Part shown: positions 4,335 through 47,389 of the stretch, piece after piece
Numbering within the stretch: the stretch's first letter is position 1
How the letters are laid out: every line of letters begins with the position of its first letter
NCBI RefSeq assembly: GCF_964213995.1
Contig: NC_135825.1
Span: forward strand, 12,152,001 to 12,216,000
DNA length: 64,000 bases
Direction of reading: 5' to 3'
DNA from: Mustelus asterias
Lineage: Eukaryota
Made by a program: the position numbers and the translations under genes
The notes under the pieces: model-generated
Seen by the model: the letters and a program-made list of their open reading frames with translations, nothing else
The model's database searches: none
What the model was told of the DNA's origin: nothing

Positions 4335-4361
4335 GTTTCCATGGAGATTTTTATGATCATT

Positions 4362-11757: not shown

Positions 11758-11932
11758 TTCAGAGAGGATGGTGGGTGCAATTGATAGGGGGAGGAGGGTC
11801 ATGAATCAGGAATGGTCCCTCCCACTTGTGAAAATTGAGGATTTGGGACTGAGTTTGACTATTGTTCAGTGAGCCAACTCCGGCACAATGAGCTGAATCA
11901 ATTCCTTCTGTTCTGTAGTTTCTAGAGGGCGG

Positions 11933-19654: not shown

Positions 19655-19816
19655 TTATACAGTCCAGTTGGTGCTTCCAGCAACAACATCATTGGGTCTG
19701 TGTCTCAGCCTCTTACTGCTATCTGCATAATTTGAAATCTCTTCCAGTTCCTGTCCAGAAACAGTCAGCCCTGTTGCCTTTTTATAGCCTTTCCAATTTC
19801 CTTCCTTATTCTTTTG
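19655..19816 (-). CDS. Gene B predicted last coding exon: cytoplasmic tail (QKNKEGNWKGYKKATGLTVSGQELEEISNYADSSKRLRHRPNDVVAGSTNWTV*)
   Basis: Acceptor cttattaaactgtcag|CAA; phase 0 matches the TM exon; open for 53 codons to TAA; conserved in paralogue C. An internal AG at 19751 and an internal gtaag donor are alternative boundaries. Confidence 0.55.
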   Translation of the reverse strand, partial: QKNKEGNWKGYKKATGLTVSGQELEEISNYADSSKRLRHRPNDVVAGSTNWTV

Positions 19817-20319
19817 CTGACAGTTTAATAAGATTGGATGATAAGATGGAAGGGTTCTTCCATGGATGGGTTACACAGGAACACAGCAACAAGAGCAGCT
19901 CATTCAGCCCCTCGAGCCTGTCACACCAACCTGCAACTCCACACAGACACTCACCCAAGGCCAAAATCGAACCTGGGTCCCTGTCTTATCTAATCCCAGC
20001 TGTGAGAATTCTAATTGGCCCAGCATCCACAGATTTTAGGATGGATTAGTTCCAGATTTCCATGACTAGCTGTGTGAAAATAATACTTCCTAATTTCACT
20101 CCTAAGTATCTAAGCCCTCACTTTTGGGTTATGGCCCCGTGTACTCCATCTCCCCACTGGGCAAAGAGTTTCTCTGTACCCACCATACTGAATCCCATAA
20201 AAACTTCAATCACCGATCCCAGCAACCTCCAAGTGTGAGGAAATGCAGCAAAGTTGTGCAATCTCTGCACATAATTTACTCCATTTTCCCTGTATCATTC
20301 TGATGTATTGATATTGCAG

Positions 20320-20755
20320 AGATGATGGTTTAGTGTCAATGTCACTGGGCTAGTAATCCAGAGGCTGATAGTAAAGTGCTGGGAACATGATTTCAACATA
20401 GTAGCTGGTGGAATATAAATGCAATGAATTCAAATTCAATTGATGAATCAATCTGGAATTGAAAATCTGACCAATGGTGGCCAGGAAGCTTGTCATCAAT
20501 TGCTGTAAAAACCCATCTGGTTGGTTGGAGATGGTGATAAACTGTCATAAATTGTCATAAATCCTCACTAATATCCTTCAGGGAAGGATATCTATTTTCC
20601 TTATGCAGTCTGACCTCCATGTGACCCCAGACCCACCGCGATGTGTTTGATTCCTAACTGTCTTCTGAAATGGCCGAGCAAGCCACTCGGATCTGGCAAT
20701 TAGGGATGGGCAACAATTCTGCCCTTGCCAGTGACGTCCACATCCCGTGAAATAG
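20320..20755 (+). mobile_element. Degenerate tRNA-head SINE, related to 34860-35235 (paralogue ~57290-57720)
   Basis: Shares atctggaatt...aaaacccatctggtt...ctgaaatggcc...ggatgggcaa blocks with 34860-35235. Confidence 0.6.
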
Positions 20756-21382
20756 AACAAAAAGACACTGCATCCCTTCCGAGGCCAATATTTTGTTCCT
20801 GTGATTCGGACACCATCCAGAACAAACAATTCAACATTGCATTATAAAATCCTCCAGTGATAAAGTGAAACTTCCATTTATGAGTGGAAGTTATCCTGGA
20901 CAAAGACAGCTGATCACTTCAGGATGGATGCAGCTGCAACAAGGATCAGGAACATTGACACAATCGAAAACAAACAGTCCCCTTGATCTTTCCTCCATAA
21001 CATCAGCAACACTTCAGAACCAAACCATATAATCTGTAAGATACTTTGGGTGGACTTTCCACCCAAGTTCCTCTGGAAGGTGGGTGCGGGAGGAGGGGGG
21101 AGGGGGCTGGACAAGAGCAGAAGATCTCGCGAGAGCCCCAATATTACTTTGATGGGAAGTCTCTTTGTGATTGTCCCCAGCTCCCATCACTGACTTCACA
21201 GGATTCCCAACGTTGAACAACATAATCAATTTGCATGTCATTATCAAGACCCGGCACCTGATCAACCCCCGCTCCCCCCACACCCCCCAACCCTCACTTC
21301 CACTGTTCGATGATCCACTCATGTCAGTGTGAGGGCACACTGGTGTGCATTATGATTGATGGCCATGGCATGTACCAGGAGG

Positions 21383-21569
21383 AAGAGTTTTAACAACACC
21401 TGGTTAAAGTCCAACAGGTTTATTTGGTAGCAAATACCATTAGCTTTCAGAGCGCTGCTCCTTCATCAGATGGAGTGGGAATTTGCGCTCAAACAGGGCA
21501 CAGAGACACAGAATCAAGTTACAGAATACTGATTGGAATGCGAATCCCAAAGCCAACCAGATCTTAAAG
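21383..21569 (-). mobile_element. Penelope-like element pLTR fragment (187 bp) with 9-bp TSD ACCAGGAGG
   Basis: Homologous to the termini of the GIY-YIG-bearing element at 58359-59301; flanked by accaggagg at 21374-21382 and 21570-21578. Confidence 0.8.
21437..21473 (-). ncRNA. Minimal type I hammerhead ribozyme motif within the Penelope pLTR
   Basis: Minus strand: CCAU-CUGAUGA-A-GGAGC-AGC-GCUCU-GAAA-GC-UA-AUGG. Stem I CCAU/AUGG, intact core CUGAUGA/GAAA, stem II GGAGC/GCUCU, palindromic AGCU helix III, UA cleavage site. Confidence 0.7.
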
Positions 21570-21632
21570 ACCAGGAGGGCAGACCCACTGGAGATGCTCA
21601 GGTGAGTGCATCGCTCAAAGTTACTGTCAAGG

Positions 21633-22520
21633 GGCAGTGTCCATTCAGTGCCAGGGGTCAGTGCCAGGGCAGTGCCCATGCTGTGCCAGTGGTCAGTGCC
21701 AGTGTCAGTGTCCATTCAGTGCCAGGGGTCAGTGCCAGGGCAGTGCCCATGCTGTGCCAGTGGTCAGTGCCAGTGTCAGTGTCCATTCAGTGCCAGGGGT
21801 CAGTGCCAGGGCAGTGCCAATGCTGTGCCAGTGGTCAGTGCCAGTGTCAGTGTCCATGCAGTGCCAGGGGTCAGTGCCAGGGCAGTGCCCATGCTGTGCC
21901 AGTGGTCAGTGCCAGTGTCCATGCAATGCCAGGGGTCTGTGCCAGTGTCAGTGTCCATGCAGTGCCAGGGGTCAATGCTGGGGCAGTGTCCATGCAGTGC
22001 CAGTGGTCAGTGCCAGTGTCAGTGTCCATGCAGTGCCAGGGGTCAATGCTGGGGCAGTGTCCATGCAGTGCCAGTGGTCAGTGCCAGTGTCAGTGTCCAT
22101 GCAGTGCCAGGGGTCAATGCTAGGGCAGTGTCCATGCAGTGCCAGTGGTTAGTGCCAGTGTCAGTGTCCATGCAGTGCCAGGGGTCAGTGCCAGGGCAGT
22201 GCCGATGCTGTGCCAGTGTTCAGTGCCAGTGTCAGTGTCCGTGCAATGCCAGGGGTCAGTGCCTGTGTCAGTGTCCATGCGGTGCCAGGGGTCAGTGCCT
22301 GTGTCAGTGTCCATGCAGTGCCAGGGGTCAGTGCCAGTGTCCATGCAGTGCCAGTGGTCAGTGCCAGTGTCAGTGTCCATGCAGTACCAGGGGTCAATGC
22401 TAGGGCAGTGTCCATGCAGTGCCAGGGGTTAATGCTGGGGCAGTGTCCATGCAGTGCCAGTGGTCAGTGCCAGTGTCAGTGTCCATGCAGTGCCAGGGGT
22501 CAATGCCAGAGGCAGTGTCG
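21633..22520 (+). repeat. CAGTGC-based composite minisatellite (~885 bp)
   Basis: Tandem variants of CAGTGCCAGGGGT / CAGTGCCAGTGT / CAGTGTCCATG. Confidence 0.95.
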
Positions 22521-22876
22521 GGGGATGGGGGGGGCGGGGGGGGGGGGGGGGTGCATGAGGTTGTGCAAGGGGAGGGGGCTTCCGTTTTCACTTTTGTGCA
22601 TCAAGTTGACTTTCAAAAATATCATTTTGATCTTGAAGAAACTGAAATTTCTGGTGGGATGGGCAGTATCCTGTCCCTTCAACATTTATACACATATTCT
22701 TCACCATATTTCTTCACCGCCTCTTTTCCCGCCCCTGCCACACTTGGAAATGAAAGGTAAAATTCCCCCCTGTGTTTAGTCCTGTGGACATTGACATCAG
22801 TGCAAGTTTCTCTGCACAATATCTGTGATAATTACAAAGTGCTCAGAATGATTGTTGTAAAGTTCATAATCCTCAC

Positions 22877-22976
22877 CTGAGATTTTCTCGTGTACCATGT
22901 GACCGAAATCACACAAATCACCAGGAGGGTAAAGAGCCCCCAGCGAATCACATTCCAGATGAAGGAACTGAGCAAA
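22877..22976 (-). CDS. Gene B transmembrane exon (SLLSSFIWNVIRWGLFTLLVICVISVTWYTRKSQ)
   Basis: Acceptor tgtatttcttccag|TTTG and donor CAG|gtgagg; 100 nt, phase 2-0, matching the stalk exon. Hydrophobic span with an intramembrane Arg followed by an RK stop-transfer. Confidence 0.85.
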
Positions 22977-25014
22977 CTGGAAGAAATACAGAATGATTTG
23001 AAGGGAATGAGGCAGCTTCGTGTTTGGAACATTAATCTCCTCTTTACACTGTGACCTATTGTAGCAGCGTCGCACAGACAAGGCACGTTAGCTGGAGCAA
23101 TCAACTAAAGTTTCACTGATCAACTTCATGATCATTAGATACAGATCAAATGGAGCTGGTTTCATTAACTTTCCTCAGTATATCTGGAATGCTGAGTAAA
23201 ATCTTAGAAGTAAGAATGTTATGAATTGACTGGTCATTGGGACAGAAACATTGTCTGGTGCAACATAACATTGGTGAGATATCTGTTCAGTGAGTAAGAA
23301 ACTTCCAATAACATCATCCCACACTGTTCCAAAGTAGAATCATATTCCACTCAATATTAACTCTGCTCCTCTCTTCACAGATGCTACCGGACCTGCTGAG
23401 TTTTCCCAGCACTTTCTGTTTTCATCATCCCACAATTCCCTGGTGCACCTCCTGACAGGAAATTCGGAACCAGCCGGAAGCAGACGGCCTCAGTTTGGGA
23501 ACAATGTATTAAACTGGGCAACTGAGAAGGAGAAGATGACAGTGAATGCAATGTTCCTGTCAGCGATACTCCAGAACACACCGGGTTAAGGGAATCTGGC
23601 ATCGCTGGAGTGTGACAAACACAACTCCATGAGATTGGGTTCACGGTGAAGTGATTAACATGAATAATGAAAACTGCACCATCTAAGGTGTGGCAAACAG
23701 AGAAAGCTCACTTCTTAGTCTGAACTTCCACTGACAGAAACAGCAACTTTGTTAGGAAGCTAACACAATACCATTATGTAAACACAGCTACCGGGTGGGA
23801 TGGTGAGCCCGGGTTGGGGGACCACAGGAATGCTGATGGGGATTCAATATCTGGCAAAACCTGGAAGGCGCAGGCGACTTCATCAGATTCACGGCCATAG
23901 TGGGCAAGAACCTGATTTACATACATTTTAATATATTTCCATATCATTAAAGACCCCCCCACTCCCCAGATATTGAGCCCTCGCTGTGTTTTCAAACCGG
24001 GGCAACGTGACATCACATTGGTGCATTTTACAACAGGTTCACCTGGACATGATGGGGAACCCCCTTCCTGGGCAAGAGGGATATGGTCAGGCAGTGGCCT
24101 GGCAATGCCCTCTGGCACTCTCCCTTGGCGCAGGTTGGCACTGCCAAGTTGGCACCATGCCACCCCAACATTGCCAACCTGGTAGTGCCAACCTGTACCA
24201 GTGGCAGTTCCGGGGTGGACCTCAGTGGGAGTCTGATGGGGGAGGGGTTATTCATTTACAAGTGAGGGTGGGCCGGAGCGGACAGGGGAGCTGGAGCAGC
24301 CGTTTGTGGGAAGGGGCTGGGTTTGTCGGCAATGGCTGTGTGGGTGGAGGGTTGGAGGGAAGGGCTCCAATGTTCGGGGGGAAGGGGGGTGGTGCCAGCA
24401 CTGACTGCTGGAGGGGGGGAAAGGTCTGATATTCGGGGGAGGGGTTTGGTGTCAGCACTGACTGCTGAGGGGTGATGTGGGGGGAGAATTGCTGGCTCAT
24501 AATAGGAGGATGCCCCGACTCTGACCGGGGTGTGGTGGGATTTGGGGGGAGCCCCTGAGAGCTCTGTGGTGGGTGGGGGGGAGGTTACATTTAGTTTTGA
24601 TTGGGCCGCCATGTTTGTGCACTGTCAGCTTACTGCAGCCAGGATTTGCTGGTGTATCGAGGCCCCGCCCCCTACATGACGATGTGAAGCACGCCCAGCT
24701 GTTTTTTTTGTGACAGAGTGTGGTAAGTTCTGGAGAGAAAGACAACCTGCTTCGAGCCAGAACCAACAGTTTTCAGTAAGATTTCCCTAATATTGTGTTT
24801 TATGTTTACGGGGGCTGTTTACAGATTCAGCTTTATTCTGGAGGCAGTCGGTGTATCAGTAAAACATTCAGTTCAGATGCTGGGAGAGCAGGATAATGGC
24901 TCATTTTAGCCATGGAGGGGGGAAGCTAAGCAAAAAATGACTGTTGTTTCCGGTGAGAAAACCGACAGGTGTCTCTCCAGAGAAACAGGTTAGATTTCTG
25001 TGCAGATCTTTGAC

Positions 25015-25650
25015 TGAGAGAGGAAACCGGAGCACACGGAGGAAACTCACGTAGGTTCAGAGAATGTGCAGACTCCAGGCAGACAGTCACCCAAGGCCAG
25101 AATTGAACTTGGATCCCTCGTGCTGCGAGGCAGCACTGCTAACCACAGTGCCTCTGTGTCACCTGTTGTCATCCTATTGTTAGATCAAAATCCAGGAATT
25201 TCTTACCACTCACTTTTCGTCCATGCCACACCAATCTGACCTGTGTCACACAACTGCAGTTCTCCCCTGATCTGATGATCACTGACACTGGAACCATTTC
25301 TGGGACCTGTGGACATTCACTCCAAGGATTTTCAAATCCTCCACATACCCCAGTATCCTCCCATTTATTATCTCACCATTTGCTTTGTTTGACCTGCTCA
25401 AATGCATCACCTCACACTTCTCTGGGTTGAATTCCATTTGCCACTTTTCTGCCCACCTGACCAGTCCATTGATATCTTCCTGCAACCGATAGCAATCCTC
25501 CTCGCTATCTACTGCATTAGTAATTTTCATTACATTCCATCTAAATCATTAATATATGCCAGAAAAAACAGGGGACCGAGCACTGAGCATTGGAAACAGC
25601 CTTCCAGTCACAAAAACAGCCATCAACAATCATCCTTTGTTTCCTGCCAC
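25015..25650 (-). mobile_element. SINE head fragment (25015-25165) and CR1 RT fragment (~25280-25650) (paralogue ~62307-62942)
   Basis: Minus-strand A-box-like ggcactgtggttagcagtgctgcc; ORF LQEDINGLVRWAEKWQMEFNPEKCEVMH is CR1 RT. Confidence 0.8.
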
Positions 25651-27295
25651 AATTAATTCTTGGCCATTTGTTTACGGAAGTGGGTTTTGAAATTATACAG
25701 CACTTTTCATGGCCTTTGGATGGCCTAAAGAATTTTATAATCTGGGAAGTATTTTTAAACAACCGCCACTGTTGTGATATGGGAGATGTGGCAACCAATT
25801 TGCACACAGCAAAATCTCAGAAACAGCAGTGAACTTTGACCAGATCAATATTGGCCATTTCTTCAGAGATCTCCTTGTCTGCTTTTTCTGTAGATAAGAA
25901 GTGACCTGCTGCGTATTTCCAGCAGCTTTTTCATCATTTTGATGTTTAGTTGGTATTTTTTCCTCATCACCATTGTAACCTCCGTGTTTACATTGGACAA
26001 CAATTTCTGCTCTTTCTGTGTGTCCCAACTATGTTAGGGGTAGTGGGTTTTAACAGAAAAAGAAAATACTTGGTTTGCACACGTAGATTCAAGCAAGCAC
26101 AAACCAGGTTTTATTGATGAGCTGCTCTCTGCACTGCATCAAGTACAAAACTGACAGTCACACAGCAGCCTGAGCACGCACCCTAATGACATCACATCAA
26201 ATCAACCCATTTTAAAACTCACACCTTCATGATGAAGCGAACACAACAACATCCCGCCAAGGTTTCTGATCTGAGAGTTATTGAAAAATGATGCCCAGTC
26301 TCCCCGATCGTCAGAGACTGGACATATGACCCAAGATGTGTGTCAGGACCCTGCAGATGACCCAACATGATGATCTCCATGGGAATTGCCTGGGACATTG
26401 GAACTTCCAACGGACAATTCTGCTGTACCCTGGGTCCCTCTGTGAAAATCTTCAGCTCTGGGTAAGAGTCAGACACTTCAAACAATTCCATGGGGCTTAA
26501 CTGGATAGTTACCCAGGAAATGTTAGACTGAAAGAATCAAGTTTAATTCCTGGGTAATCACAGAACTGACCCCCGAATAATCACACTGACCCCCTGGAGT
26601 CCCCCCAATCCTCTGATTAACCCCCTGACACACCAACTATCACCCCACACTCCGCCAATTCCACCTGATCTTGTGACTATGCCACAACCTGAGCCAATCC
26701 GATTATTCCCTCTGACTACCCTTTGCACCCACCACTTGATTACCCAATGTCCAAATCTGATTAGCCCCCAAACCAGGCTACCCCTGCCAACCTGACCCAA
26801 TTGCCACACTATTCATCTACCACCTCATCAACCTACAACCTCACCCACCTGCAACCCTACCCTCCTGTCACTTCATCAACAGACTACCTCACCCAACTGC
26901 CACTCTACCCACCTCACACGCTTGTGACCTCACTCATCTGTTTTCTCACCCACCTACCATCCTTGCCTCCGACTAGCAACACATCTATACACCTGTCTCC
27001 CTATCCATCTTTCACCCGACCCACCTGTGCTCCTACAGAGTTCCGATGGAGTTCTCCGAGGGACACTGCGCTCCACAGTTCTGGAGAATCTGGAGTCGGA
27101 AGATCAGGCAAGAAATGTGGAGCTGAGTCGAGGGTGGAAAGCTTCAAGCGGAGTGGCAATCCAACAATGATTGCTGCTCTGTGACTGGCCCAGGACAATA
27201 AATGACATCCATTCTCACGCCAAAGTTGTTAAAGAGGATTTAATCACTCACACAGAAGCCATGTCATTTAAACACTAACAATAAAAACAGCGTAC

Positions 27296-27374
27296 CTTTC
27301 AGCAAATTTGGAGTTTGGAATTGAGGAATGTGTTGGCGATACTGTTAAAATTTCACAAGAATTTTCAGGTCCGA
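27296..27374 (-). CDS. Gene B stalk exon (VGPENSCEILTVSPTHSSIPNSKFAE+AG)
   Basis: Acceptor gttgtttccttctttcag|TCGG and donor AAAG|gtacgc; 79 nt, phase 1-2. Links the C2 exon (phase 1) to the TM exon (phase 2) in frame; S/T/P-rich. Confidence 0.8.
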
Positions 27375-28569
27375 CTGAAAGAAGGAAACAACATTCAGAT
27401 CAGCCTCATTTTCATTGTCGTTAACTGAGAGAGTCACATTGTCAAGTGGCACCTCAACCTGAGGGAGAACCACGTTGAGGGAGCGCCTCTTCTTGGGATG
27501 TGGGTGTCGCTGTTTAGGCCAGCAATTATTGCCCATCCCTAATTGCCCTTGAGAAGGTGGTCATGAGATGCCTCTTGAACCGATGCAGTCCATGTGGTGT
27601 AGGTACATCCACTGTGCAGTGAGGGAGGGAGCACCCATCGCATCTGCGCCAGTCAAAAACAAACCACCTGACTATTCCAAACCCAGTTTCCAGCACTTGG
27701 CCCATAGCTCTGTGTGCCTTGGCATCACGAGTGCACATCTAAATAATTCTTAAATGTTATGAGGGTCTGTAAGACACCAGGAAAACTTGCCTATTCCTCC
27801 TGGAAGAGGGCCATGAAATCATTTACATTTAGCTCAAAGGATGCATGGATCAGCAGTTCAACCAGACAATAGCACCGTCAACAGCAGAGCGCAATCTCCG
27901 TGCTGTACAGTGATATCAACCCCTTTCTCGGAAGGAGAATTTGAACTCACAATCCATTGGTTTCAGAAATCAGGCTGCTACCAACTGAGCCCCTTCTGAC
28001 ACTGACATATTTGAATATTAAACATTCAAACTGGTTATAGTCCTCATTAATTCAGGACTATCGTTAGTGTTTATGTTAACACTGAGTAATTCAGTGTTTA
28101 GAACATGGAATTCTGAGATTTTGAGCAGCATTTTGTGATGATAGAATTTTTCGGCAAAGAAGGAAATTTGGTCCATTGCCCTCCATCGCTATGAAAGAAT
28201 TTGCCATTTAGAATCAGAGAATCCATGCAGCGCACAAGGAGGCCATTTGGCCCATCGAGTCTACAACGACACTCCCATTGTTGTGTCTTTTCCCCAAATC
28301 CTCCTAAATGTCTGCTCCTTTTTTGCTTCCCTTGTGAAAGCTGTTATTGATTCTGTTTCTAACGCAATCCATATCTTAACAATCATTTGCATCAATAAAA
28401 TTCTCCCAATTTCTCCCGCTGTCCTTGTTGTGATGATCTTAACTGGATTCTCTCGAGTATTCACTCACTTACTACTGGAAATAATTAGTCTCAATTTATC
28501 TTATCAAAGCTTCAAATAATTTTGAATAGATTTAGCAGACTATTTCCTTCTATTCTAATGATTCTTTGC

Positions 28570-29330: not shown

Positions 29331-29695
29331 CTTTCATTTTGTAAGTGAGACCTCTTAAGATGCTATCATTTCACATCAACTCTTCAACTCTCTATCCTTA
29401 CGATTCATCCTAAAGCAAGAGACATCAGCTAAAGATTGTTATTCACAATTTGATCTCCAAGAAATGGGAACAGGAATGGTTAATGGAGACCTTGTCAGTC
29501 AAGTTCTATTTAATATTAATGGGATTACTGCAACATTTAGACATGTTTGGGGAATATTTTATGATCCTGATATTTTCAATCAATATTTTAATCAGTAACT
29601 TTGTTCCGAGTTGTTGAGGGACAAAGCAGAGTGAATTTTGTCAGTTGCAGTCATTCAGAGAGACATTAGGAACCGAACCAGCAACCAGCTTATTT

Positions 29696-31320: not shown

Positions 31321-31339
31321 TATTTCAACTATCACTTAC

Positions 31340-36536: not shown

Positions 36537-36548
36537 TTCACCCCTCCT

Positions 36549-39500: not shown

Positions 39501-40598
39501 AACCTTTATATCCATCATGGAATTTTCATGTCTGTAGTGCCTGGTCTGGTCCAGGGAGATCGACGCCACCGTTGGCCCCTGGGCGTCACTGCATGCTGCC
39601 GATGTGGATGCTGAGGACCCCTGCTGGTCGCTCCTAGTCGTCGTGGACCATGATGGCCGCCCCCATGAATCGCACATGGGCGAGGGCGCCAAGTGCAGCG
39701 ACTCCTGGTGGTCTTCCTCCTCCTCCGTCAGCCACGATGGCGCCATCCTGGGATCGCACGTGGTCGGACCTCGTGGGTACTGCGACGCTGAAGGAGATTG
39801 TCTCCGTTCTGGAGGGTTACAAGCTGCACTGCCGTTTTTAGGCTTGGACCTGCAGACTTTGCCGTAGTGGCCTTTTTTACCGCACTGGCTGCAGATTGCC
39901 GTTCTTGCCGGACACTGTTGCCGTGGATGCTTGGCCCCACCACAAAAATAGCATCGCTGGCCACCTGGAGCTGCCGCCGTCGTCGGATCGATCTGGGAGC
40001 GCGGGTTAGCGGGGCGAGGAGGGAGCTGAGCTTGCTCCAGCCACGTTGACTGCACGTGGTCCTCGGGGTACAGCGCCAAGCTCTTCGACGCCGCTTCCAG
40101 CATCACGGCCATCTCCATTGCTTGGGTCAAGTCGAGTTTCCCCTTTTCCAGCAATTTAAGCCTGATGTACGAGGACCCTACCCCTGCTACGAACGCGTCT
40201 CGGGCGAGGTCGTACATATATTGTTCGGCTGATACGTCTTTACAATCGCAACCCCTGGCAAGCTGCAGGAGCTCATTGGCGTAGTCCTCCATGGTTTCGC
40301 CCGACTGCCAACGTCGTGTAGCGAGGAGGTAACGAGCATGTATCTCGTTGGGTGGCTTCGTGTATCTTTTTTTTAGGAGCTCGACGGCACCCGGGTAAGT
40401 GGGAGCTGCACGAATGGCGAGATAAATCATGTCGCTTACCCTTGCGTGGAGGACCTGGAGTTTATCACTGTCTGTAGTGATAGCTACTGAGGCTGCCAGG
40501 TAGTCCTCGAAACACTTCCACCAATGGTCGAATGTGTTAGCTGCACCGACCGCACGTGGGTCCAGTGTCAGACGATCCGCTTTTAAGATCTGTTCCAT
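36549..40598 (-). CDS. Gag-Pol polyprotein, single ORF of 1349 aa from MEQILK
   Basis: Two CX2CX4HX4C knuckles (CYFCGGAKHPRQQC, CSQCGKKGHYGKVC), protease LFDSGS, RT (IDLKSAYHQ, VPFGVTNG, YLDN), RNase H (SDAS, EKEAQA, TDQ, SDALSR), integrase HHCC and D-D-E (VDFKG, SDRGSSF, VERENAT). No chromodomain seen. Confidence 0.95.
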   Translation of the reverse strand: MEQILKADRLTLDPRAVGAANTFDHWWKCFEDYLAASVAITTDSDKLQVLHARVSDMIYLAIRAAPTYPGAVELLKKRYTKPPNEIHARYLLATRRWQSGETMEDYANELLQLARGCDCKDVSAEQYMYDLARDAFVAGVGSSYIRLKLLEKGKLDLTQAMEMAVMLEAASKSLALYPEDHVQSTWLEQAQLPPRPANPRSQIDPTTAAAPGGQRCYFCGGAKHPRQQCPARTAICSQCGKKGHYGKVCRSKPKNGSAACNPPERRQSPSASQYPRGPTTCDPRMAPSWLTEEEEDHQESLHLAPSPMCDSWGRPSWSTTTRSDQQGSSASTSAACSDAQGPTVASISLDQTRHYRHENSMMDIKVSGRTVNCLFDSGSTESFIHPETAKRCGLRVLPAKQKISMASRSRSVPIQGRCMVTLEVQGTIYEQYRLLVLPHLCAPILLGLNFMVHMKSVILQYGGPLPSLAVGNQPQPPNCPKRPACNLSTLKITTPSLFKNLVPGCKPIATKSRRYSAEDRIFIRSEVQRLLKEGIIQASASPWRAQVVVVKSGNKPRMVIDYSQTINRYTQLDAYPLPRISDMVNQIAQYRVFSTIDLKSAYHQLPIRPEDRQYTAFEADGRLYQFLRVPFGVTNGVSVFQRAMDRMVDQNGLRATFPYLDNVTICGHDQQDHDTNLQHFLRTASRLNLTYNREKCVFRTRRLAILGYVVENGVIGPDPDRMRPLTELPLPASTKALRRCLGFFSYYAQWVPNYADKARPLIKSTTFPLTPEAQLAFKALKSDISKATMHAVDESIPFQVESDASDFALAATLNQAGRPVAFFSRTLQGPEIRHSAVEKEAQAIVEAVRHWRHYLAGKRFTLITDQRSVAFMFSNTQRGKIKNDKILRWRIELSTYNYDIMYRPGKLNESSDALSRGTCAIMQEDRLKALHNDLCHPGVTRLYHFVKARNLPYSVEDVRSVTRSCRICAECKPHFYRPDRAQLVKATRPFERLSVDFKGPLPSTDRNVYFLNIIDEYSRFPFVVPCADTSTATVIKAFSELFTLFGYPCYIHSDRGSSFMSNDLRQFLLSFGIASSRTTSYNPRGNGQVERENATVWKAVLLALKSRGLPVSRWQEVLPKALHSIRSLLCTATNATPHERMFSFPRKSSSGTSLPAWLTYPGPVLLRRHVRARRSDPLVEPVQLLHANPQYAYVAYPDGREDTVSIRDLAPAGDVATPVAPIPPVTNPLLLIASRDVARSAPGPVHNTFTPMYSLPETREIGATIITTTTTTKGSRIPCTIASPGPTGPGVLEGTARRCFGKNATASTCSGFATGVEEITASVRSSRPSGLVNSVYMTCFFLHPATFCS

Positions 40599-40647
40599 AC
40601 TCTCTTTTTTTTTGTACAGCTGTGAGTTTTCTGTTACACAATAAAAT

Positions 40648-40943
40648 TGATGCGCAACAATTAAGCACGTGGAACCAAGGCTTCGATATTGAAGGCTTTT
40701 ATTGTGTAACAATGGAACTACTAACACGAATACACCAGTTCAGACTGAAGGGGTCCTGCCGGAGCAGGGGGTCTTATACCTCGCCACCGGAGGCGGGACC
40801 CCACTGGAATGTGCCATGATAACTCTTATAACAGGTAAACACCCTAACCCAACAACATTGTACAACCCCCACAGTAACAACACCCTAGCCCAACAGTAAC
40901 ATAATAACAACCCTCAGTGGTGAACCAACGATGGTTCACCACA
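40648..40943 (-). repeat. 5' LTR with TATA-like TATAAG (40773-40778), Inr-like TTCAGT (~40746) and AATAAA (40698-40703)
   Basis: Motifs read on the minus strand; TATA-to-Inr spacing is about 32 nt. Confidence 0.9.
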
Positions 40944-41586
40944 GTTTCCATGGAGATTTTTATGATCATTTGGAACATTTGGAATATTGTGTCCAATTCT
41001 GGTCACCACACAACCAGAAGGATGTGGAGGCTTTGGAGAGAGTGCAGAAAAGGTTGACCAGGATGTTGCCTGGTATGGAGGGTATTACCTATGAGGAGAG
41101 TTTGAATGAGCTGGGATTGTTCTCCCTGGAAAGACAGAGGCTGAGGGGCAACCTGAGAGAAGTTTATAAAATTATGAGAGGTGTGGATAGAGTGAACAGT
41201 TGGAAGCTTTTTCCCAGGCAGAAATGACAATTAGAAGGACGCACAAGTTCAAGATAACGGGGGAAAGATTCAGTGGAGATGTGCGGGAGAACTTTTTTAC
41301 ACAGAGGGTGGTGGGCGCCTGGAATGCACTGCCAAGTGAGGTGGTTGAGGCACTTATATTAGCTATATTTAAGGTTTTATCTTGGTAGACGTATGAACAA
41401 ACAGGGAATAGAGGAATATAAGCATTGGTAAACGTGATCAGCGCAGGAAGGGCCTGTTCCTGTTCTGTACTGTTCTTTGTTCTTTGTTCTTTGATCCCTT
41501 TAAGGGGCTTTCACCATATTGGATTATTTAATTGTTTAATTTGCCGATTTGTTAACTTTTAATCTGTCAGCTTCACCCTGAATTTT

Positions 41587-43382
41587 CATAAGACCATAAG
41601 ACCATAAGACATAGGAGCGGAAGTAAGGCCATTCGGCCCATCGAGTCCACTCCACCATTCAATCATGGTTGATTTCAACTCCATTTACCCGCTCTCTCCC
41701 CATAGCCCTTAATTCCTCGAGAAATCAAGAATTTATCAATTTCTGTCTTGAAGACGCTCAACGTCTCGGCCTCCACAGCCCTCTGTGGCAATGAATTCCA
41801 CAGACCCACCACTCTCTGGCTGAAGAAATTTCTCCTCATCTCTGTTCTAAAGTGACTCCCTTTTATTCTAAGGCTGTGCCCCCGCGTCCTAGTCTCCCCT
41901 GTTAATGGAAACAACTTCCCTACGTCCATCCTATCTAAGCCGTTCATTATCTTGTAAGTTTCTATCAGATCTCCCCTCAACCTCCTAAACTCCAATGAAT
42001 ATAATCCCACGATCCTCAGACGTTCATCGTATGTCAGGCCTACCATTCCTGGGATCATCCGTGTGAATCTCCGCTGGACCCGCTCCAGTGCCAGTATGTC
42101 CTTCCTGAGGTGTGGGGCCCAAAATTGCTCACAGTACTCCAAATGGGGCCTAACCAGTGCTTTATAAAGCCTCAGAAGTACATCCCTGCTTTTGTATTCC
42201 AAGCCTCTTGAGATAAATGACAACATTACATTTGCTTTCTTAATTACGGACTCAACCTGCAAGTTTACCTTTAGAGAATCCTGGACTAGGACTCCCAAGT
42301 CCCTTTGCACTTTAGCATTATGAATTTTGTCACCGTTTAGAAAATAGTCCATGCCTCTATTCTTTTTTCCAAAGTGTACAACCTCGCACTTGCCCACGTT
42401 GAATTTCATCAGCCACTTCTTGGACCACTCTCCTAAACTGTCTAAATCTTTCTGCAGCCTCCCCACCTCCTCAATACTACCTGCCCCTCCACCTATCTTT
42501 GTATCATCGGCAAACTTGGCCAGAATGCTCCCAGTCCCGTCATCTAGATCGTTAATATATAAAGAGAACAGCTGTGGCCCCAACACTGAACCCTGCGGGA
42601 CACCACTTGTCACCGGTTGCCATTCTGAGAAAGAACCTTTTATCCCAACTCTCTGCCTTCTGTCTGACAGCCAATCGTCAATCCATGTTAGTACCTTGCC
42701 TCGAATACCATGGGCCCTTATTTTACTCAGCAGTCTCCCGTGAGGCACCTTGTCAAAGGCCTTTTGGAAGTCAAGATAGATAACATCCATTGGCTCTCCT
42801 TGGTCTAACCTATTTGTTATCTCTTCAAAGAACTCTAACAGGTTTGTCAGGCACGACCTCCCCTTACTAAATCCATGCTGACTTGTCTTAATCCGACCCT
42901 GCACTTCCAAGAATTTAGAAATCTCATCCTTAACGATGGATTCTAGAATTTTGCCAACAACTGAGGTTAGGCTAATTGGCCTATAATTTTCCATCTTTTT
43001 TCTTGTTCCCTTCTTGAACAGTGGGGTTACAACAGCGATTTTCCAATCCTCTGGGACTTTCCCTGACTCCAGTGACTTTTGAAAGATCATAACTAACGCC
43101 TCCACTATTTCTTCAGCTATCTCCTTTAGAACTCTAGGATGTAGCCCATCTGGGCCCGGAGATTTATCAATTTTCAGACCTTTTAGTTTCTCTAGCACTT
43201 TCTCCTTTGTGATGGCAACCATATTCAACTCTGCCCCCTGACTTTCCTGAATTGTTGGGATATTACTCATGTCTTCTACTGTGAAGACTGACGCAAAGTA
43301 CTTATTAAGTTCCTCAGCTATTTCCTTGTCTCCCATCACTAGATTACCAGCGTCATTTTGGAGCGGCCCAATGTCTACTTTT
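41587..43382 (-). mobile_element. CR1 LINE, 5'-truncated, open RT frame (paralogue of 4978-6773)
   Basis: ORF 41675-43549, same motifs as copy 1. Confidence 0.95.
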
Positions 43383-43930
43383 TGCTTTATTTGAAAGAAG
43401 CACAAACTGACACATTGCGGATACATCTGGATGTTGGGAGTTTGACTGGCTTCCCAACATATTGTCAATTTCTGTGTATTTAACCCCCTCTGTGCTCCCC
43501 CACCCACCCCCACAGCCCCACCATTCAGCGCTAAACCAACAAGGTACAATTACTACCAACTGGCTGCTCACTTCACTTTGTTAATGTCTGACGATTGGAT
43601 TGATCTGGACTGTAAAAATCTGACAGTGTGATATTTAAGACATTTCAGAGACAGGAAAATATTCTGAGCATCGCGGGTAATGTCTTTCACAATATCCTGC
43701 AGTTAAAGGAATTGTTTGTCTGATTATGTTTGAAGTTCTTGATCAGAATGTTGGACAGGCCACGAATTGAGTTTGTGTCACAAGAGTCGGATTTCCAGAT
43801 CTCTGCCCTCTAGCTGCCAGACTCTGCATTGCTGCAGAGCCTCGGGATATCGGAGCTGTCAATGTTTCCTTGTGGATAAAACATGGATCAGACATTTCAG
43901 TAATAAAGAAAATCATTCAGAATAATGTAC

Positions 43931-44251
43931 CGTAAGATATTTGCAGCTCCACGGTTACCTTTGGATCTAAGTCAGGTATATCAATTCCACAGCGATACCA
44001 TCCTGCATCTCCTGAGCGAAGATCCTCCATCGTAACAGCAAATATTCCTTGTGCCTTGTTATCTGTGATCGACATTCTCCCTCGCCGTCCATCTGGATCA
44101 TCCGTTCTCACTAAATATGAGCACTGTTCAGTCCAACCCTGACACCAATATTTCACGTTTTGTTTGTATTTCCCTTTATAATTGCAATTTATTGTGATCG
44201 ATCTTCCCACAATTCCTGTGACTTTCTTTTCTGCCCACAATGCACCTGAAA
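43931..44251 (-). CDS. Gene B exon 2: V-set Ig domain (V1), CD300/pIgR-like
   Basis: Same splice sites as 7322-7642; differs by H->Q in KYWC(H/Q)GW. Confidence 0.92.
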
Positions 44252-47200
44252 CTGAGGAGACAACATTTCAGCAATTGACCAAGTAAATAACTGCTTCATA
44301 CAGAGAGAAACATTTTAATAAGATTTACCACTGTGTACAGAGGAAACTCTCCAATACCTGTATTCATCATTCTCTTTCTAGTTTGTGATCAATGAAAACA
44401 TGAATATAGAGCCGTGCTGTCAGTGCCAAAGTACTTCACTGACAATGATTTCTTGTGAATGTACAGTGGCCATTGTTATTGTGTCACCTTGTCACTCAAG
44501 CTTTGCACTGGCGCCTCTGAATGGGTGGATTGCAGGGTCAGGTCCCACTCCAGAGACTGGAGTATAAAATCTACATTAACATTCCAGTGTAATACTGAGG
44601 GACAAGATGGCTCAGATTTTCCTCCCTCAGTCATGTTCAAAGAGCTCGGTGATGCCATTCAGGTGAAAGGTTCATCTGACACCCAGGTCTGGAGGTTCCC
44701 TGTCATGGAGAAAATCCCGGGAATGGCTGGAATTTCAAAGTCCTAAGAGTGGGAGCGGGACTGGAATCAGGCTGCATACACGATTCGTGGAGGCGAATTG
44801 TCATTAAATTCAACACCTGCCTTGATTTAAGTGAGATTTTGGATGAACAGGAGTGTGGAATCCGGTGTGTGCAGATTAGAATAGTTAAGAGAAGGTTTGA
44901 ACTTGGTGGATTCTTATGGACAGCCAGGGTATGCCTTCTGGACAGGAAAGTTACTCTTTGGAAGAGGAAAGTTACTCTTTGGGAGGGGAAAATTACTCTT
45001 TGAGGGGGGAAAGTTCCTCTTTGTGGGGAGAAATTTATTCTTTGGGACAAACTCTGGTGAGTGGTCAGGGCCAGAGTGATTATCTGGTTGTTTCAATTAT
45101 TCTATTTATTAACCATGGCGCTGGGGCACAGAAACAGGCCTTGTGTCCAGCTCACCTCCGGGCTGAGCAGCCTGTGGATTTGTTCCTGGGTCACCCGTCT
45201 CGATTCATTTTTTAATGCCTTTCCTGACTCAATGAACACGACCCAGGGATGAGATGAGGAGATTGTTTTCACTCAAGGTGTTGGGAATCTTTGGAATTCT
45301 CCACCGCAGAGAGCTTTAGATGTACAGTCTTGAAGGATATTAAACACAGAGATTTATACATTTTTGTGGTACTAACATAATCGAGGGATATGGGAATAGT
45401 GCGGGAAATAAGATTTGAGGTTGGAGATCAGTCAGGATGTTGTTGAATGATGGAGCAGGCTCAAAGGGACAAATGGCCATCTCCTGCTCTTATTTCTAAT
45501 GTTCATCTTGAGGGGGAGAGGTGGCAGTATGAATCAAAAATTCCATTGCAGCCAGCATAATAGCATCAGTTTAATATGGGGCTGGTGTGAAAATTTAGAT
45601 TTACTTTAAAAAGAAAATGATTACATCTTTGAAGGTCAAAGTAGACCAACCATGTACAAGTGATTGGATGGTACCATGGTGAGCCCGGCTGCCTCACAGG
45701 GCCAGTGACTTGGGTTCAATTCTGGCCTCAGGTGACTGTGTGGAGCTTGCATATTCTCCCATGTCTGCGTGGGATATCGCAGGGTGCTCCAGTTTCTACC
45801 TACAGTCCAAATATGTGCAGGTTAAGTTGATTGGCCATGCTAAATTGTCCCTTAATGTCCAAAGATGTATAGGTTAGGAAGTTAGTGAGGGAAATATGTG
45901 GTGTTACGGGGATAGGGCCTGGGTAACATGCTTAGCCGGAGAGTTGTTGCAGATGTGATGGGCCGAATGGCCTCCTTTTGTACTGTTGAGATTCTTTGAA
46001 GCAGATTTACCAACAGAGCTTCATAAAACAATATTTCATTCGTAATAATTTAAATAATACAAACAAAAGAAGGAAAATGGTCTGTTGGCCTTCATAGCGG
46101 GAGGATTTGAGTACAGGGATAGGGATGTTTTGCTGCAATTGTACAGGGCATTGGTATGGCCTCACCTGGAGTATTGTGTGCAGTTTTGGTGTCCTTATCT
46201 GAGGAAGGATGTCCTTGCTATAGAGTAAGTACAGTGAAAGTTGACCAGGCTGATTCCTGGGATGACAGGTCTGCTTTATGAAGAGGGACTAAGTCAGTTA
46301 GGATTATATTCACTGGTGTTTAGAAGAGTGAGGCGGGATCTCATAGAAATTTATAAAATTTGAACAGGGTTACAGAGGGTAGATTCAGAAAGAATGCCCT
46401 CAATGGTGAGGGAGTCCAGAACTAGGGGGTCATAGTTTGAGGATAAGGGGCAAACCATAAAGAACTGAGATGAGGAGAAATTTTTTCACCCAGAGGGTGG
46501 TGAATGTGTGGAATTCACTCCCACAGAATGTAGTTGAGGCCAAAACGTTGTCTGATTTCAAGAAAAAATTAGATATAGCTCTTGGGGATAAAGGGATCAA
46601 GGAATATGGGAAGAAGGGGATCAGGGTATTGAATTGGATGATCAGCCATGATCAAAATGAATGGCGGAGCAGGCTCGAAGGGCCGAATGGCCTACTCCTG
46701 CTTCTAGTTTCTATTTTTCTATGTTTCTAATTGCAAGCTTGAGGAATATTTTCCTGGAGCCTTTGTTGCCTCTGCAGTCTTCAGAGTCAATTCAATGAGC
46801 AATAATCTGCAATGGATCACAGGCATCTCTCAACGTGAGGGAGGGACAATTGGTTACATTTAGTGTGGGGGGCAGGAATGGGGAAAGGTGAGGAGGCAGA
46901 TTTCCATAAACTACCACAGCCGCTCTGAGGATTGAACCCCTGCCATTGGAATCATTCCGCATTGCACTCCAAACAACTGAGCCAATCAAACCCTCCAGTC
47001 TCCAGGATATATTGAGCATGAAACTACATTAACAAGTTAACTTTTACTGGACTGAAATGTGTGGCTTCTGCATTTTAATTATATTAATCATGTAGCTTTT
47101 TAACAAAAATAAATAGGTTAATTTATATTCACAATCAATAATGCCGTTTATTATTTGCTGGGTAAATATTTCTGTGGTACAATACTATCAACAAAATAGC

Positions 47201-47352
47201 TACAAATATCACACAAATTCATTAATTTATTTTTGCTGAGTTTTTGTAGCTTTACATGTCTCCAAGTATTTAAATATCTCTGCGGGATAAACCATGCACG
47301 AGACTTAATCTAACACTCATCATCTCGGGATCCAGCTTTGTCCCTTACTCAC

Positions 47353-47389
47353 CAGGCAGAGAAAAGATGACAAGAATCAGAATCCACAT
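47353..47389 (-). CDS. Gene B exon 1: signal peptide
   Basis: Identical to 10744-10780; ATG at 47389 and donor gtgagtaag. Confidence 0.9.

What the first reader, a model, noticed from the sequence alone, without database searches (positions are those of the whole stretch)
19655..47389. Hidden multi-exon activating Ig receptor (V-C2-V-C2-stalk-TM) in a recently amplified tandem array of at least three genes
Seen: eight minus-strand exons with canonical AG/GT sites and compatible phases (37+321+324+309+324+79+100+162 = 1656 nt, ~551 aa). The ORF track shows only fragments of them. Parts of two more copies flank it (gene A 5' end at 7322-10780, gene C 3' end at 56622-60269). Established: V domains with an extra C-C' Cys pair mark the CD300/pIgR/TREM group, and skate MDIRs are modular receptors of this group. 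Inference: this is an expanding cartilaginous-fish innate receptor cluster combining pIgR/CD300-type V domains, FcR-like C2 domains and an activating TM. It may bind Ig or lipid ligands. I cannot tell whether this exact architecture has been described.
Basis: partly seen in the sequence, partly recalled or inferred. Interest (0 to 1): 0.85.

Follow-up and report, generated by a model that had tools for sequence, protein, structure and literature searches.

The report
Shark MDIR-type Ig receptor gene array
This is one complete copy of a four-domain immune receptor gene of the known shark and skate MDIR family, sitting in a young tandem array in the starry smooth-hound, where the public annotation fuses neighbouring copies into giant proteins.

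Summary
The eight minus-strand exons exist as described. Exons 1-5 (leader, V, C2, V, C2) match residues 1-438 of RefSeq LOC144511684 of Mustelus asterias exactly, junction residues included. That model then runs on into the next two array copies. The 79-nt stalk and 100-nt Arg-bearing TM exon are supported by paralogues (88% and 97%). A 48-nt exon at 19378-19331 matches the tail of an activating paralogue and is the likelier end.

The family is already known. Clearnose-skate MDIR5 has the same V-C2-V-C2-TM(Arg) string at 53-67% identity per Ig domain. The window holds about 1.7 units of a ~37 kb repeat (97.7-99.3% identity), and RefSeq models imply at least five ectodomain cassettes. One neighbouring copy ends in an uncharged TM with two ITIMs. 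A junction between a truncated LINE and a truncated C2 exon lies between stalk and TM, suggesting a chimeric origin.

No RNA evidence was obtainable: the runs laid were DNA. The scan had already noted this array on the adjacent overlapping window.

Verdict: new member of a known kind.

The parts
47353..47389 (-). Exon 1 of gene B: ATG plus leader (37 nt), donor GTGAGT, ends in phase 1
   Evidence: Identical to P0248 residues 1-12. Copy in gene A is 100% identical including 30-nt flanks.
43931..44251 (-). Exon 2: V domain 1 (321 nt), pIgR/CD300 type with 4 Cys; an alternative AG lies 6 nt downstream at 44245
   Evidence: (V-set 3.1e-12). Exact match to P0248 residues 14-119. The long acceptor agrees with RefSeq and with the skate MDIR5 N-terminus.
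33903..34226 (-). Exon 3: C2 domain a (324 nt), FCRL-like
   Evidence: Ig_3 31.3 bits; FCRL5. Exact match to P0248 residues 121-227.
32925..33233 (-). Exon 4: V domain 2 (309 nt), a distinct V subtype with only 3 Cys
   Evidence: (V-set 2.1e-10). Exact match to P0248 residues 229-330. Groups with the third domains of white, basking, whale and epaulette shark homologues.
31340..31663 (-). Exon 5: C2 domain b (324 nt), 92% nt / 80.5% aa identical to exon 3
   Evidence: Exact match to P0248 residues 332-438.
27296..27374 (-). Exon 6: stalk (79 nt, phase 1 to 2), most like the stalks of inhibitory-type paralogues
   Evidence: 88% to P0210, 84% to the end of P0248, 56% to white shark P0170; in each it directly follows the last C2. 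Splicing untested.
22877..22976 (-). Exon 7: transmembrane exon (100 nt, phase 2 to 0) with W-N-V-I-R-W near its outer end
   Evidence: 97% to the TM of M. asterias P0161; 66 matching segments among 266 relatives. The junction residue Ser after the stalk is the same as in P0161.
19331..19378 (-). Preferred terminal coding exon e8' (15 codons plus stop) giving a short tail
   Evidence: tblastn of the P0161 tail, 80% over 15 aa. Sequence and acceptor, 14 of 18 pyrimidines. Similar tails follow the TM in P0254 and P0179. Same exon in gene C at about 56298-56345.
19655..19816 (-).
   Evidence: 0 of 266 relatives match. Weakest acceptor. Its only Tyr outside the membrane-proximal part is Asp in gene C.
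25237..25513 (-). Fossil junction: 3'-truncated LINE reverse-transcriptase fragment (25513-25289) abutting the last ~64 nt of a C2 exon (25300-25237)
   Evidence: 58 of 64 identical to the 3' end of exon 5; 161 of 214 to the LINE at 30579-30356. Same remnant in gene C at 62521-62592.
7322..10780 (-). Gene A 5' end: exon 1 (10780-10744) and exon 2 (7642-7322)
   Evidence: One change in exon 2 (Gln to His). This V equals the second V of P0248.
56298..62592 (-).
36549..43549 (-). Intron 2 retroelements in sense orientation: Gypsy-type gag-pol ORF (36549-40727, 1392 aa) and LINE RT ORF (41675-43549)
   Evidence: RVT_1, RNase H, rve, aspartyl protease; RVT_1. The Gypsy ORF is shared with gene A's unit at 99.3%.
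1..64000 (.). About 1.7 units of a ~36.6-37.3 kb tandem repeat

Best explanation
Gene B is one complete unit of a recently amplified tandem array of MDIR-family (modular domain immune-type receptor) genes on a chromosome of the shark Mustelus asterias.

Shown:
- It has a leader exon, four phase-1 Ig exons (pIgR/CD300-type V, FCRL-type C2, a second V subtype, C2), a stalk exon, a TM exon carrying an Arg near the outer leaflet, and a short-tail exon.
- The ectodomain type is shared with lamniform, orectolobiform and other carcharhiniform sharks.
- Neighbouring units carry near-identical ectodomains, and one of them ends in an uncharged TM with two ITIMs.

Inferred:
- The unit is transcribed on its own from its own leader and spliced e5-e6-e7-e8'. 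That gives a ~513-aa type I membrane receptor with a 15-residue tail.
- The receptor cannot signal alone. It pairs through its TM Arg with an acidic-TM ITAM adaptor of the FcR-gamma or DAP12 kind.
- It therefore acts as the activating partner of the ITIM-bearing neighbour, recognising the same unknown ligand.
- The activating 3' end was probably acquired by a deletion. This joined an inhibitory-type gene (through its stalk exon) to the 3' end of an older activating gene, and the chimera was then amplified.
For: - Exon structure and phases.
- e1-e5 are identical to P0248 residues 1-438 with the predicted junction residues.
- Each unit keeps its own ATG leader (100% identical in A and B) and its own TM and tail exons with open frames in B and C.
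- e6 directly follows the last C2 in P0210, at the end of P0248 and in P0170.
- e7 is 97% identical to the TM of P0161, where it is preceded by the same Glu-Ser junction and followed by a 15-aa tail 11/15 identical to e8'.
- Family membership: MDIR5, MDIR3 and MDIR2 are among the hits, and MDIR5 has the same V-C2-V-C2-TM(Arg) string.
- A W-x-x-x-R-W motif followed by a hydrophobic stretch occurs in 53 of 266 relatives.
- The ITIM-bearing neighbour is the end of P0248 (I-V-Y-A-S-V and V-T-Y-A-T-L).
- The V tree puts V1 with first domains (7-row clade, 97/93) and V2 with third domains (8-row clade, 89/93) of white, basking, whale and epaulette shark proteins.
- The LINE/C2 fossil junction lies between e6 and e7. 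No activating-type stalk is left between it and e7.
- TMs with Arg near the N-terminal end (NxxR) were shown to associate with FcR-gamma in Xenopus XFL and mammalian LRC receptors: PMC2413239, passages seen.
Against: - No transcript evidence at all. None of the 18 listed runs is on record as RNA.
- The four runs that hold the stretch behave as genomic DNA. Their contigs run unbroken across the e6 and e7 borders, and none of the 15 listed joints sits at a predicted splice site, with 255 more joints not shown.
- The short-protein search found only genomic read-through ORFs.
- RefSeq's own models do not use e6-e7-e8' for units B and A. They splice C2b straight to the next unit's V exon (P0248), or use two other exons at 27090-27022 and 23914-23777 (P0001).
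- Intron 2 holds a sense-oriented, intact Gypsy element and a LINE, which could truncate transcripts.
- The units are too young (0.7-2.3% divergence) for any test of purifying selection.
- The N of NxxR is present in only 5 of 55 family TM motifs.
- A 2014 survey reported no FcR-gamma homologue in the shark data then available (PMC4016189, passages seen). The adaptor is therefore unidentified.
Confidence: 0.6

Rival explanations
1. RefSeq-type read-through. The Ig exons of units B, A and the next unit are spliced into one long transcript (LOC144511684, 12 Ig domains) that ends in the inhibitory TM and ITIM tail. The leader, stalk and Arg-TM exons of the inner units are unused relics.
For: P0248 has exactly this structure. 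All Ig exons are phase 1-1, so any chaining stays in frame. The annotation pipeline did not choose e6-e7 for these units.
Against: Other M. asterias models from the same cluster are obvious chains, for example P0249 'titin-like' (12 Ig) and P0001 with a junk-like tail. That is typical of homology-driven merging over tandem arrays. Each unit keeps an intact ATG leader with a consensus donor, and intact TM and tail exons. Single-unit receptors of 450-600 aa are the rule in other species, and the skate MDIR5 entry is 501 aa. That MDIR5 was cloned as cDNA is recalled, not seen in a call. A 23.7-kb intron skipping four good exons would be needed.
Confidence: 0.15
2. The amplified units are young, weakly expressed or silent duplicates (pseudogenes in the making). 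The exons look intact only because the copies are too recent to have decayed.
For: Divergence between units is only 0.7-2.3%. Sense-oriented intact Gypsy and LINE elements lie in the introns. A rearrangement scar lies inside the gene. No RNA run holds the stretch. RefSeq gave them no stand-alone model.
Against: No stop or frameshift was seen in any of the exons examined in A, B or C. The C2a, V2 and C2b peptides recur unchanged in 5, 3 and 4 cassettes of the two RefSeq models. Absence of RNA runs here reflects missing data, not measured silence.
Confidence: 0.15
3. One reading: as in the best explanation, but ending with the 162-nt exon (53-residue tail) instead of the 48-nt exon.
For: AG acceptor, phase 0 and an open frame to a stop, conserved as an open frame in gene C.
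Against: 0 of 266 relatives match it, while e8' matches the tail of P0161 and resembles those of P0254 and P0179. It has the weakest polypyrimidine tract of all exons, 11/18 against 14/18 for e8'. 3 substitutions lie within the 162-nt exon between B and C, two non-synonymous, including its Tyr to Asp.
Confidence: 0.07
4. Assembly artefact: the tandem copies are uncollapsed haplotypes or a mis-assembled repeat, not real paralogues.
For: Very high identity between units. Only one assembly was seen.
Against: Units differ by indels, a 350-nt block, and minisatellite length (12.6 copies of a 71-nt unit in B's unit), with divergence uneven along the unit. Two adjacent RefSeq loci contain five cassettes with distinct diagnostic residues. 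Independent DNA runs show several variant versions of the 22.8-28.8 kb stretch: 4 of the 27 listed differences below 26708 equal copy C's letter, and the other 23 match neither B nor C.
Confidence: 0.03

Closest known systems
Clearnose skate MDIR5 and the MDIR family (P0198, P0183, P0238). The describing paper, Cannon et al. 2006, Immunogenetics 58:362, was seen only as a reference-list entry; its content is recalled, because the paper is not held.
   Same: Same domain string: leader, V, C2, V, C2, stalk, TM with W-x-x-x-R-W, short tail. Per-domain identity is 53-67%, and 55% for the TM. The leader start is alike. It is a multigene family with charged-TM and ITIM forms. The V domains are related to CD300/pIgR/TREM (passages of PMC3031540).
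   Different: Different lineage. Skate V domains fall in batoid clades outside the 28-row shark clade (99/97) in the V tree, so this is family membership, not one-to-one orthology. The shark gene has a distinct 3-Cys second V subtype. The residue before the Arg is Lys-x-x in MDIR5 and Asn-x-x here.
White shark 'polymeric immunoglobulin receptor-like' P0170 (597 aa) and its basking, whale and epaulette shark counterparts P0171, P0175, P0023
   Same: Same V1-C2-V2-C2 ectodomain with the same two V subtypes in the same order. P0170 has a stalk like e6 (56%).
   Different: P0170 continues into an uncharged TM and an ITIM-bearing tail. Gene B's unit has an Arg-TM exon and no detectable inhibitory TM or tail exon.
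RefSeq LOC144511684 (P0248, 1458 aa) and LOC144511685 (P0001 = XP_078098046.1, 1254 aa) of Mustelus asterias
   Same: These are the same DNA. P0248 residues 1-438 are gene B's exons 1-5.
   Different: The models chain three units each and omit the stalk, TM and tail exons of units B and A. P0001 ends in two exons with no family similarity.
FcR-gamma-coupled receptors with an NxxR TM: LILRA2, PIR-A, NKp46, GPVI, OSCAR, Fc-alpha-R, Xenopus XFL (PMC2413239 and PMC4536121, passages seen)
   Same: N-x-x-R at the N-terminal end of the TM with a short tail. Paired with ITIM-bearing relatives in the same cluster.
   Different: The ectodomain contains pIgR/CD300-type V domains rather than only C2 domains. 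The Asn is not conserved across the shark and ray family: K 21, D 13, S 6, N 5 of 55. Adaptor association is untested.
Mammalian pIgR, CD300 and FCRL5 (solved structures 7jg2, 5d4k, 1zox, 9loc)
   Same: V1 aligns to pIgR domains 1-5 and to CD300f, including the Y-W-C ... C extra pair. C2a aligns to six FCRL5 repeats.
   Different: Neither mammalian family alternates the two domain types. There is no separate 21-bp second leader exon as in FCRL genes. There is no long pIgR-type cytoplasmic tail.

Membership tests
MDIR (modular domain immune-type receptors of elasmobranchs) | Significant full-length similarity to the named skate MDIR proteins | tested here: met
   MDIR3, MDIR5 and MDIR2 are hits of shark relatives of this gene (E 4.5e-146, 1.8e-122, 4.5e-59). 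MDIR3 scores 3.3e-185 against a cassette 99-100% identical to gene B. The window's exons score 53-69% identity per domain.
MDIR (modular domain immune-type receptors of elasmobranchs) | Modular ectodomain built from a few Ig-domain subfamilies in variable number (here alternating V-type and C2-type) | tested here: met
   Architectures of 60 or more relatives by exon-wise BLAST: V-C2, V-C2-V-C2, V-C2 x3, V-V-C2 and others.
MDIR (modular domain immune-type receptors of elasmobranchs) | Multigene family with charged-TM and ITIM-bearing members | tested here: met
   Arg-TM motif in 53 of 266 relatives; uncharged L-I-Y-I-V-L type TM in 21 of 266. ITIMs in P0248, P0210, P0170, P0155.
MDIR (modular domain immune-type receptors of elasmobranchs) | One-to-one orthology with a particular skate MDIR gene | tested here: not met
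   In the V-domain tree, skate MDIR domains group with other batoid domains, outside the shark clade (99/97).
pIgR/CD300/TREM-type V domain | V-set fold with a second, C-C' disulphide pair | tested here: met
   This applies to V1: Cys at exon-peptide positions 22, 36, 43, 87, aligned to pIgR and CD300f. It is NOT met for V2: Cys at 22, 39, 83 only, with the C-strand Cys deleted.
Bona fide polymeric Ig receptor | Ectodomain of tandem V-type domains only, plus a long cytoplasmic sorting tail | tested here: not met
C2 domains alternate with V domains.
FCRL / classical FcR genes | C2-type domains similar to FCRL D-types | tested here: met
   FCRL5 9e-42 summed over six stretches, best single 9.1e-7.
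FCRL / classical FcR genes | Split leader with a 21-bp second exon (rule quoted in PMC2413239) | tested here: not met
   The leader is a 37-nt exon followed directly by the V exon.
FcR-gamma-coupled NxxR transmembrane type | N-x-x-R at the N-terminal end of the TM segment | tested here: met
   N-V-I-R in exon 7. However, Asn occupies that place in only 5 of 55 family motifs.
FcR-gamma-coupled NxxR transmembrane type | Physical association with FcR-gamma (or another acidic-TM ITAM adaptor) | not testable with these tools
   No adaptor sequence of this species could be searched. PMC4016189 reported no FcR-gamma homologue in the shark data of 2014.

The most novel reading that the evidence does not exclude
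The array records the birth and rapid amplification of an activating receptor. A deletion with about 12 nt of overlap joined a LINE in the 3' part of an inhibitory MDIR gene to the last C2 exon of an older activating gene downstream. The inhibitory gene's entire ectodomain and stalk thereby came in front of an Arg-TM and short tail. This chimera was then copied at least three to four times next to an ITIM-bearing gene whose ectodomain is 99-100% identical. That would be a shark counterpart of KIR/LILR/PIR-type paired receptors caught within ~1-2% divergence of its origin, as expected for a pathogen-driven decoy/counter-decoy arms race.
Probability: 0.4. Interest if true: 0.6.

Novelty: new member of a known kind. 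Interest (0 to 1): 0.35.

Why it matters
The family (MDIR) and the domain string were described in a skate in 2006. Dozens of elasmobranch RefSeq models carry the same string under automatic names such as 'polymeric immunoglobulin receptor-like' and 'Fc receptor-like protein 5'. The gene itself is therefore not a discovery.

Three points have some value:
1. The public annotation of this M. asterias cluster is wrong in a systematic way. It has chained 12-Ig models, a 'titin-like' name and junk tails, and it hides the Arg-TM exons. The same problem probably affects counts of activating versus inhibitory receptors in other shark genomes.
2. The locus shows pIgR-type V domains, FCRL-type C2 domains and an LRC-like Arg-TM in one shark receptor. 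This qualifies the published statement that pIgR, FcRL and LRC-like receptors first appear in bony fish (PMC4016189, passages seen).
3. If the chimera reading holds, this is an unusually young and legible example of how an activating partner of an inhibitory receptor arises and expands. That makes it testable by RNA and adaptor-pairing experiments.

Tried and rejected
RNA evidence. The look-up of sequencing runs on 31300-34300 listed 18 runs, none on record as RNA. 14 held a 0.05-0.09 share, in organisms A-D, and 4 (X15-X18, organism E) held 0.47-0.48. I laid X15-X18 on 22800-28799, chosen to test the e6-e7 joint and RefSeq's alternative tail exons. Depth was found in 30, 30, 28 and 30 of 30 bins. 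Contigs were continuous over both borders of e6 (records 6, 14, 30) and across e7 together with flanking intron (record 25; record 1 its acceptor side). No listed joint lay at a predicted splice site. These runs are DNA and say nothing about splicing.

Transcript-derived ORFs. A search for short ORFs holding C2b plus what follows gave 4 proteins. Two are annotated relatives from other species and two are genomic-type read-through ORFs. This was not informative.

I therefore could not fetch the RefSeq gene ranges or the DNA of the inhibitory neighbour. The order X-D-C-B-A-Z is inferred from protein models and diagnostic residues only.

Older stalk exon. I looked for an activating-type stalk exon between the C2 remnant and e7. 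Best local scores were 28-35, against 24-40 for 30 shuffles of one query. None was found.

Inhibitory exons. I looked for an inhibitory TM or tail exon in the window with the tails of P0210, P0170 and P0155. Only e6 itself was hit. The apparent similarity running on past e6's donor was rejected as chance, because the paralogues show the same phase-2 Ser junction.

Literature. Cannon et al. 2006 (PMC3701310) and Cannon et al. 2010 (PMC2823954) are not held, so what I say of the 2006 paper's content is recalled. Searches for MDIR, modular domain immune-type receptor, CD300, shark, pIgR and FCRL found no paper describing this shark cluster. Searches on Mustelus asterias with genome, and on DAP12, FcR gamma and cartilaginous fish, found nothing on these genes. 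Supplements were not opened.

Steps not taken. Structure prediction, fold search, Rfam and the protein atlas were not used, because sequence-level matches were already decisive. The joined (spliced) protein was deliberately not built, typed or searched. Every search used single exons or database proteins.

Full report
OBSERVATION.
- e1 47389-47353: 37 nt, ATG, donor GTGAGT.
- e2 44251-43931: 321 nt, with a second AG 6 nt further on.
- e3 34226-33903: 324 nt.
- e4 33233-32925: 309 nt.
- e5 31663-31340: 324 nt.
- e6 27374-27296: 79 nt.
- e7 22976-22877: 100 nt.
- e8 19816-19655: 162 nt, ending in a stop.

All exons have AG and GT sites. The entry phases are 0,1,1,1,1,1,2,0. Every search used single exons or database proteins.

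DOMAINS. Pfam calls e2 and e4 V-set (3.1e-12 and 2.1e-10). It calls e3 and e5 Ig_3/Ig_2 (e3 31.3 bits against a cut-off of 30; e5 28.4) and finds nothing for e6-e8.

Against solved structures, V1 aligns to all five pIgR domains (3.6e-45 summed) and to CD300f (5.7e-20), including the extra Cys pair. C2a aligns to six FCRL5 repeats (9e-42 summed, best single 9.1e-7).

V1 has four Cys. V2 has three and lacks four residues around the C-strand Cys. The 'extra C-C' pair' therefore holds for V1 only.

ORGANISM AND ANNOTATION. A search of 1.84 billion representatives with the V1 exon gave 2755 hits at E<=0.001. The best, P0001 (81% identity over five V stretches), is XP_078098046.1, 'uncharacterized protein LOC144511685', of Mustelus asterias. 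This is a carcharhiniform shark.

A further search found P0248, LOC144511684, 1458 aa. Its residues 1-12, 14-119, 121-227, 229-330 and 332-438 are exactly the in-frame translations of e1-e5. The single residues between them (V, E, A, E, then V) are those predicted from the split codons.

Gene B's V1 carries a Gln that occurs in no other cassette of P0248 or P0001. This pins the start of P0248 to gene B.

P0248 then continues into a second cassette whose V equals gene A's V exon (7642-7322, His variant). A third cassette follows and ends with an e6-like stalk, an uncharged TM and a tail with two ITIM-type motifs.

P0001 is a V-C2-C2 set plus two cassettes plus a 67-residue tail. That tail is encoded by sequences equal to 27090-27022 and to 23914-23777 / 61206-61069 of the window.

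RefSeq therefore already uses the Ig exons, but it chains neighbouring units and ignores their stalk, TM and tail exons. Another model of the cluster is even named 'titin-like' (P0249, 12 Ig).

Whether chaining reflects RNA or only homology-driven prediction I could not find out.

THE 3' EXONS.
- e6 matches 3 of 266 collected relatives: M. asterias P0210 (88%), the end of P0248 (84%) and white shark P0170 (56%). In each it directly follows the last C2. In each it is followed by an uncharged TM and ITIMs.
- e7 gives 66 matching segments among the 266. The best is 97%, to M. asterias P0161. There the TM follows a stalk through the same Glu-Ser junction and precedes a 15-residue tail.
- That tail has a counterpart in the window at 19378-19331. 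It is 11 of 15 identical, has a strong acceptor and ends in a stop. The same exon occurs in gene C.
Within the 162-nt exon it differs between B and C at three sites, two non-synonymous, one changing its Tyr to Asp.

I therefore prefer e8' as the last exon. That gives about 513 rather than 551 residues.

FAMILY. With the epaulette shark relative P0023 as query, 117 proteins scored E<=1e-20. Nearly all are elasmobranch RefSeq models named 'polymeric immunoglobulin receptor-like', 'Fc receptor-like protein 5' or 'uncharacterized'. Three are the clearnose skate proteins MDIR3, MDIR5 and MDIR2.

MDIRs were described in 2006. The reference was seen and a one-sentence description in PMC3031540. The paper itself is not held, and its content is recalled.

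A V-domain tree was built from 47 rows: 45 BLAST-delimited segments of at least 70 aa from 18 proteins, plus the two window exons. P0248 was left out as identical to the window.
- V1 falls in a 7-row clade (97/93) with the first domains of white, basking, whale and epaulette shark proteins and both V domains of a catshark protein.
- V2 falls in an 8-row clade (89/93, not starred) with the third domains of the first four of those proteins and with M. asterias paralogues.
- The skate MDIR domains fall with other batoid domains, outside the 28-row shark clade (99/97).

The four-domain ectodomain is thus old among galeomorph sharks. The relation to the skate genes is family membership, not one-to-one orthology.

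ARRAY. Self-comparison shows 1-13100 = 36589-49704 (99.3%), 13097-21540 = 50055-58515 (97.7%) and 22091-26708 = 59370-64000 (98.1%), a period of 36.6-37.3 kb. Without the minisatellite, 22700-26708 is 99.45% identical to its partner. Divergence is therefore uneven along the unit.

Intron 2 of both A and B carries the same intact Gypsy-type element and a LINE, both in sense orientation.

Counting cassettes in the two adjacent RefSeq loci gives five V1-C2a-V2-C2b sets plus one V-C2-C2 set. 'At least three genes' is therefore right and conservative.

Earlier notes of this scan place a TM exon, a breakpoint and a Gypsy copy at the positions expected one period to the left and right. I did not check those.

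CHIMERA LEAD. Between e6 and e7 lies the last ~64 nt of a C2 exon: 25300-25237, 58 of 64 identical to the end of e5. It is fused, with about 12 nt of overlap, to a LINE reverse-transcriptase fragment that is truncated at its 3' side: 25513-25289, 161 of 214 identical to the LINE at 30579-30356.

LINE insertions are normally truncated at the 5' side (established knowledge). This junction therefore looks like a deletion scar.

Several further observations bear on it:
- The stalk is of the inhibitory type.
- The TM is of the activating type.
- No inhibitory TM or tail exon is in the unit.
- No activating-type stalk is left.
- An ITIM-bearing neighbour has a 99-100% identical ectodomain.

The simplest reading is that an inhibitory gene was joined to the 3' end of an older activating gene and the product was amplified. 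Two earlier notes of the scan on the adjacent window say the same. My support comes from this window's copy and from the protein models. I could not see the neighbour's DNA.

MECHANISM. Shown: the parts listed above.

Inferred: a type I receptor whose TM Arg, in the outer third of the helix, needs an acidic-TM ITAM adaptor.

Two results count against a strict 'NxxR' reading:
- Among 55 W-x-x-x-R-W motifs in 53 of 266 relatives, the first x is K in 21, D in 13, S in 6, N in 5 and another residue in 10.
- A 2014 survey found no FcR-gamma, pIgR or FcRL homologue in the shark data then available (PMC4016189, passages seen).

The ligand is unknown.

WHAT IS MISSING. There is no RNA evidence. No listed run is RNA. 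The four holders are DNA: contigs are continuous across exon borders and there are no splice-site joints among the 15 listed, with 255 not shown. In those DNA runs, 4 of the 27 listed differences below 26708 equal copy C's letter and 23 equal neither B nor C. This fits further copies or alleles. The last protein search found no transcript-type ORF.

VERDICT. This is a real, correctly delimited gene unit, apart from its last exon. It belongs to the known MDIR family and lies in a young tandem array that RefSeq annotates as chained giants. It is a new member of a known kind. The moderately interesting open question is the apparent recent birth and amplification of an Arg-TM partner of an ITIM receptor.

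Noticed in passing
window 36549-40727 (and 1-4140): Gypsy-type element with an uninterrupted 1392-aa gag-pol ORF (protease, RT, RNase H, integrase). It lies in sense orientation inside intron 2 and is shared by units A and B at 99.3%, so it was copied with the unit.
   Followed up: partly
window 21633-22519 (partner 59365-59806): GC-rich minisatellite, 71-nt unit (36-nt half unit), 12.6 copies at 89% matches. It lies in the intron between the TM exon and the tail exons, and its length differs between units B and C.
   Followed up: partly
window 27305-27351: One DNA contig of run X15 (27058-27518) has 8 of its 10 differences inside the 79-nt stalk exon, and the other 2 listed lie in its ~380 nt of flanks. 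This looks like a diverged paralogue's stalk or a short conversion tract.
   Followed up: no
window 19379-19411: The intron just upstream of the e8' acceptor repeats the exon's own start: read in frame it gives S-L-N-E-S-D, then the acceptor, then S-L-N-E-S-N. This is a small local duplication that also offers a second AG.
   Followed up: no
window 27022-27090 and 23777-23914 (also 61069-61206): RefSeq model P0001 ends in two exons with no similarity to any family member. Part of that region (23200-23599, 24000-24199) has raised depth in DNA runs, suggesting repeat-derived sequence.
   Followed up: partly
proteins P0249, P0254, P0248, P0001 (M. asterias RefSeq): Four models of 1049-1458 aa chain 8-12 Ig domains from neighbouring units. 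One is named 'titin-like', and P0254 contains a second leader peptide in its middle. This is systematic over-merging of the cluster.
   Followed up: partly
window 60170-60269 and 56622-56783 versus 22877-22976 and 19655-19816: Units B and C differ in the TM exon by two non-synonymous changes (Ser/Phe, Tyr/Phe).
   Followed up: yes
run X17, loose end at window 26809: A 19-nt loose end with agreement 1.0 looks like a transposase library adaptor (recalled, not tested). It hints that these coded runs are tagmentation-type DNA libraries.
   Followed up: no
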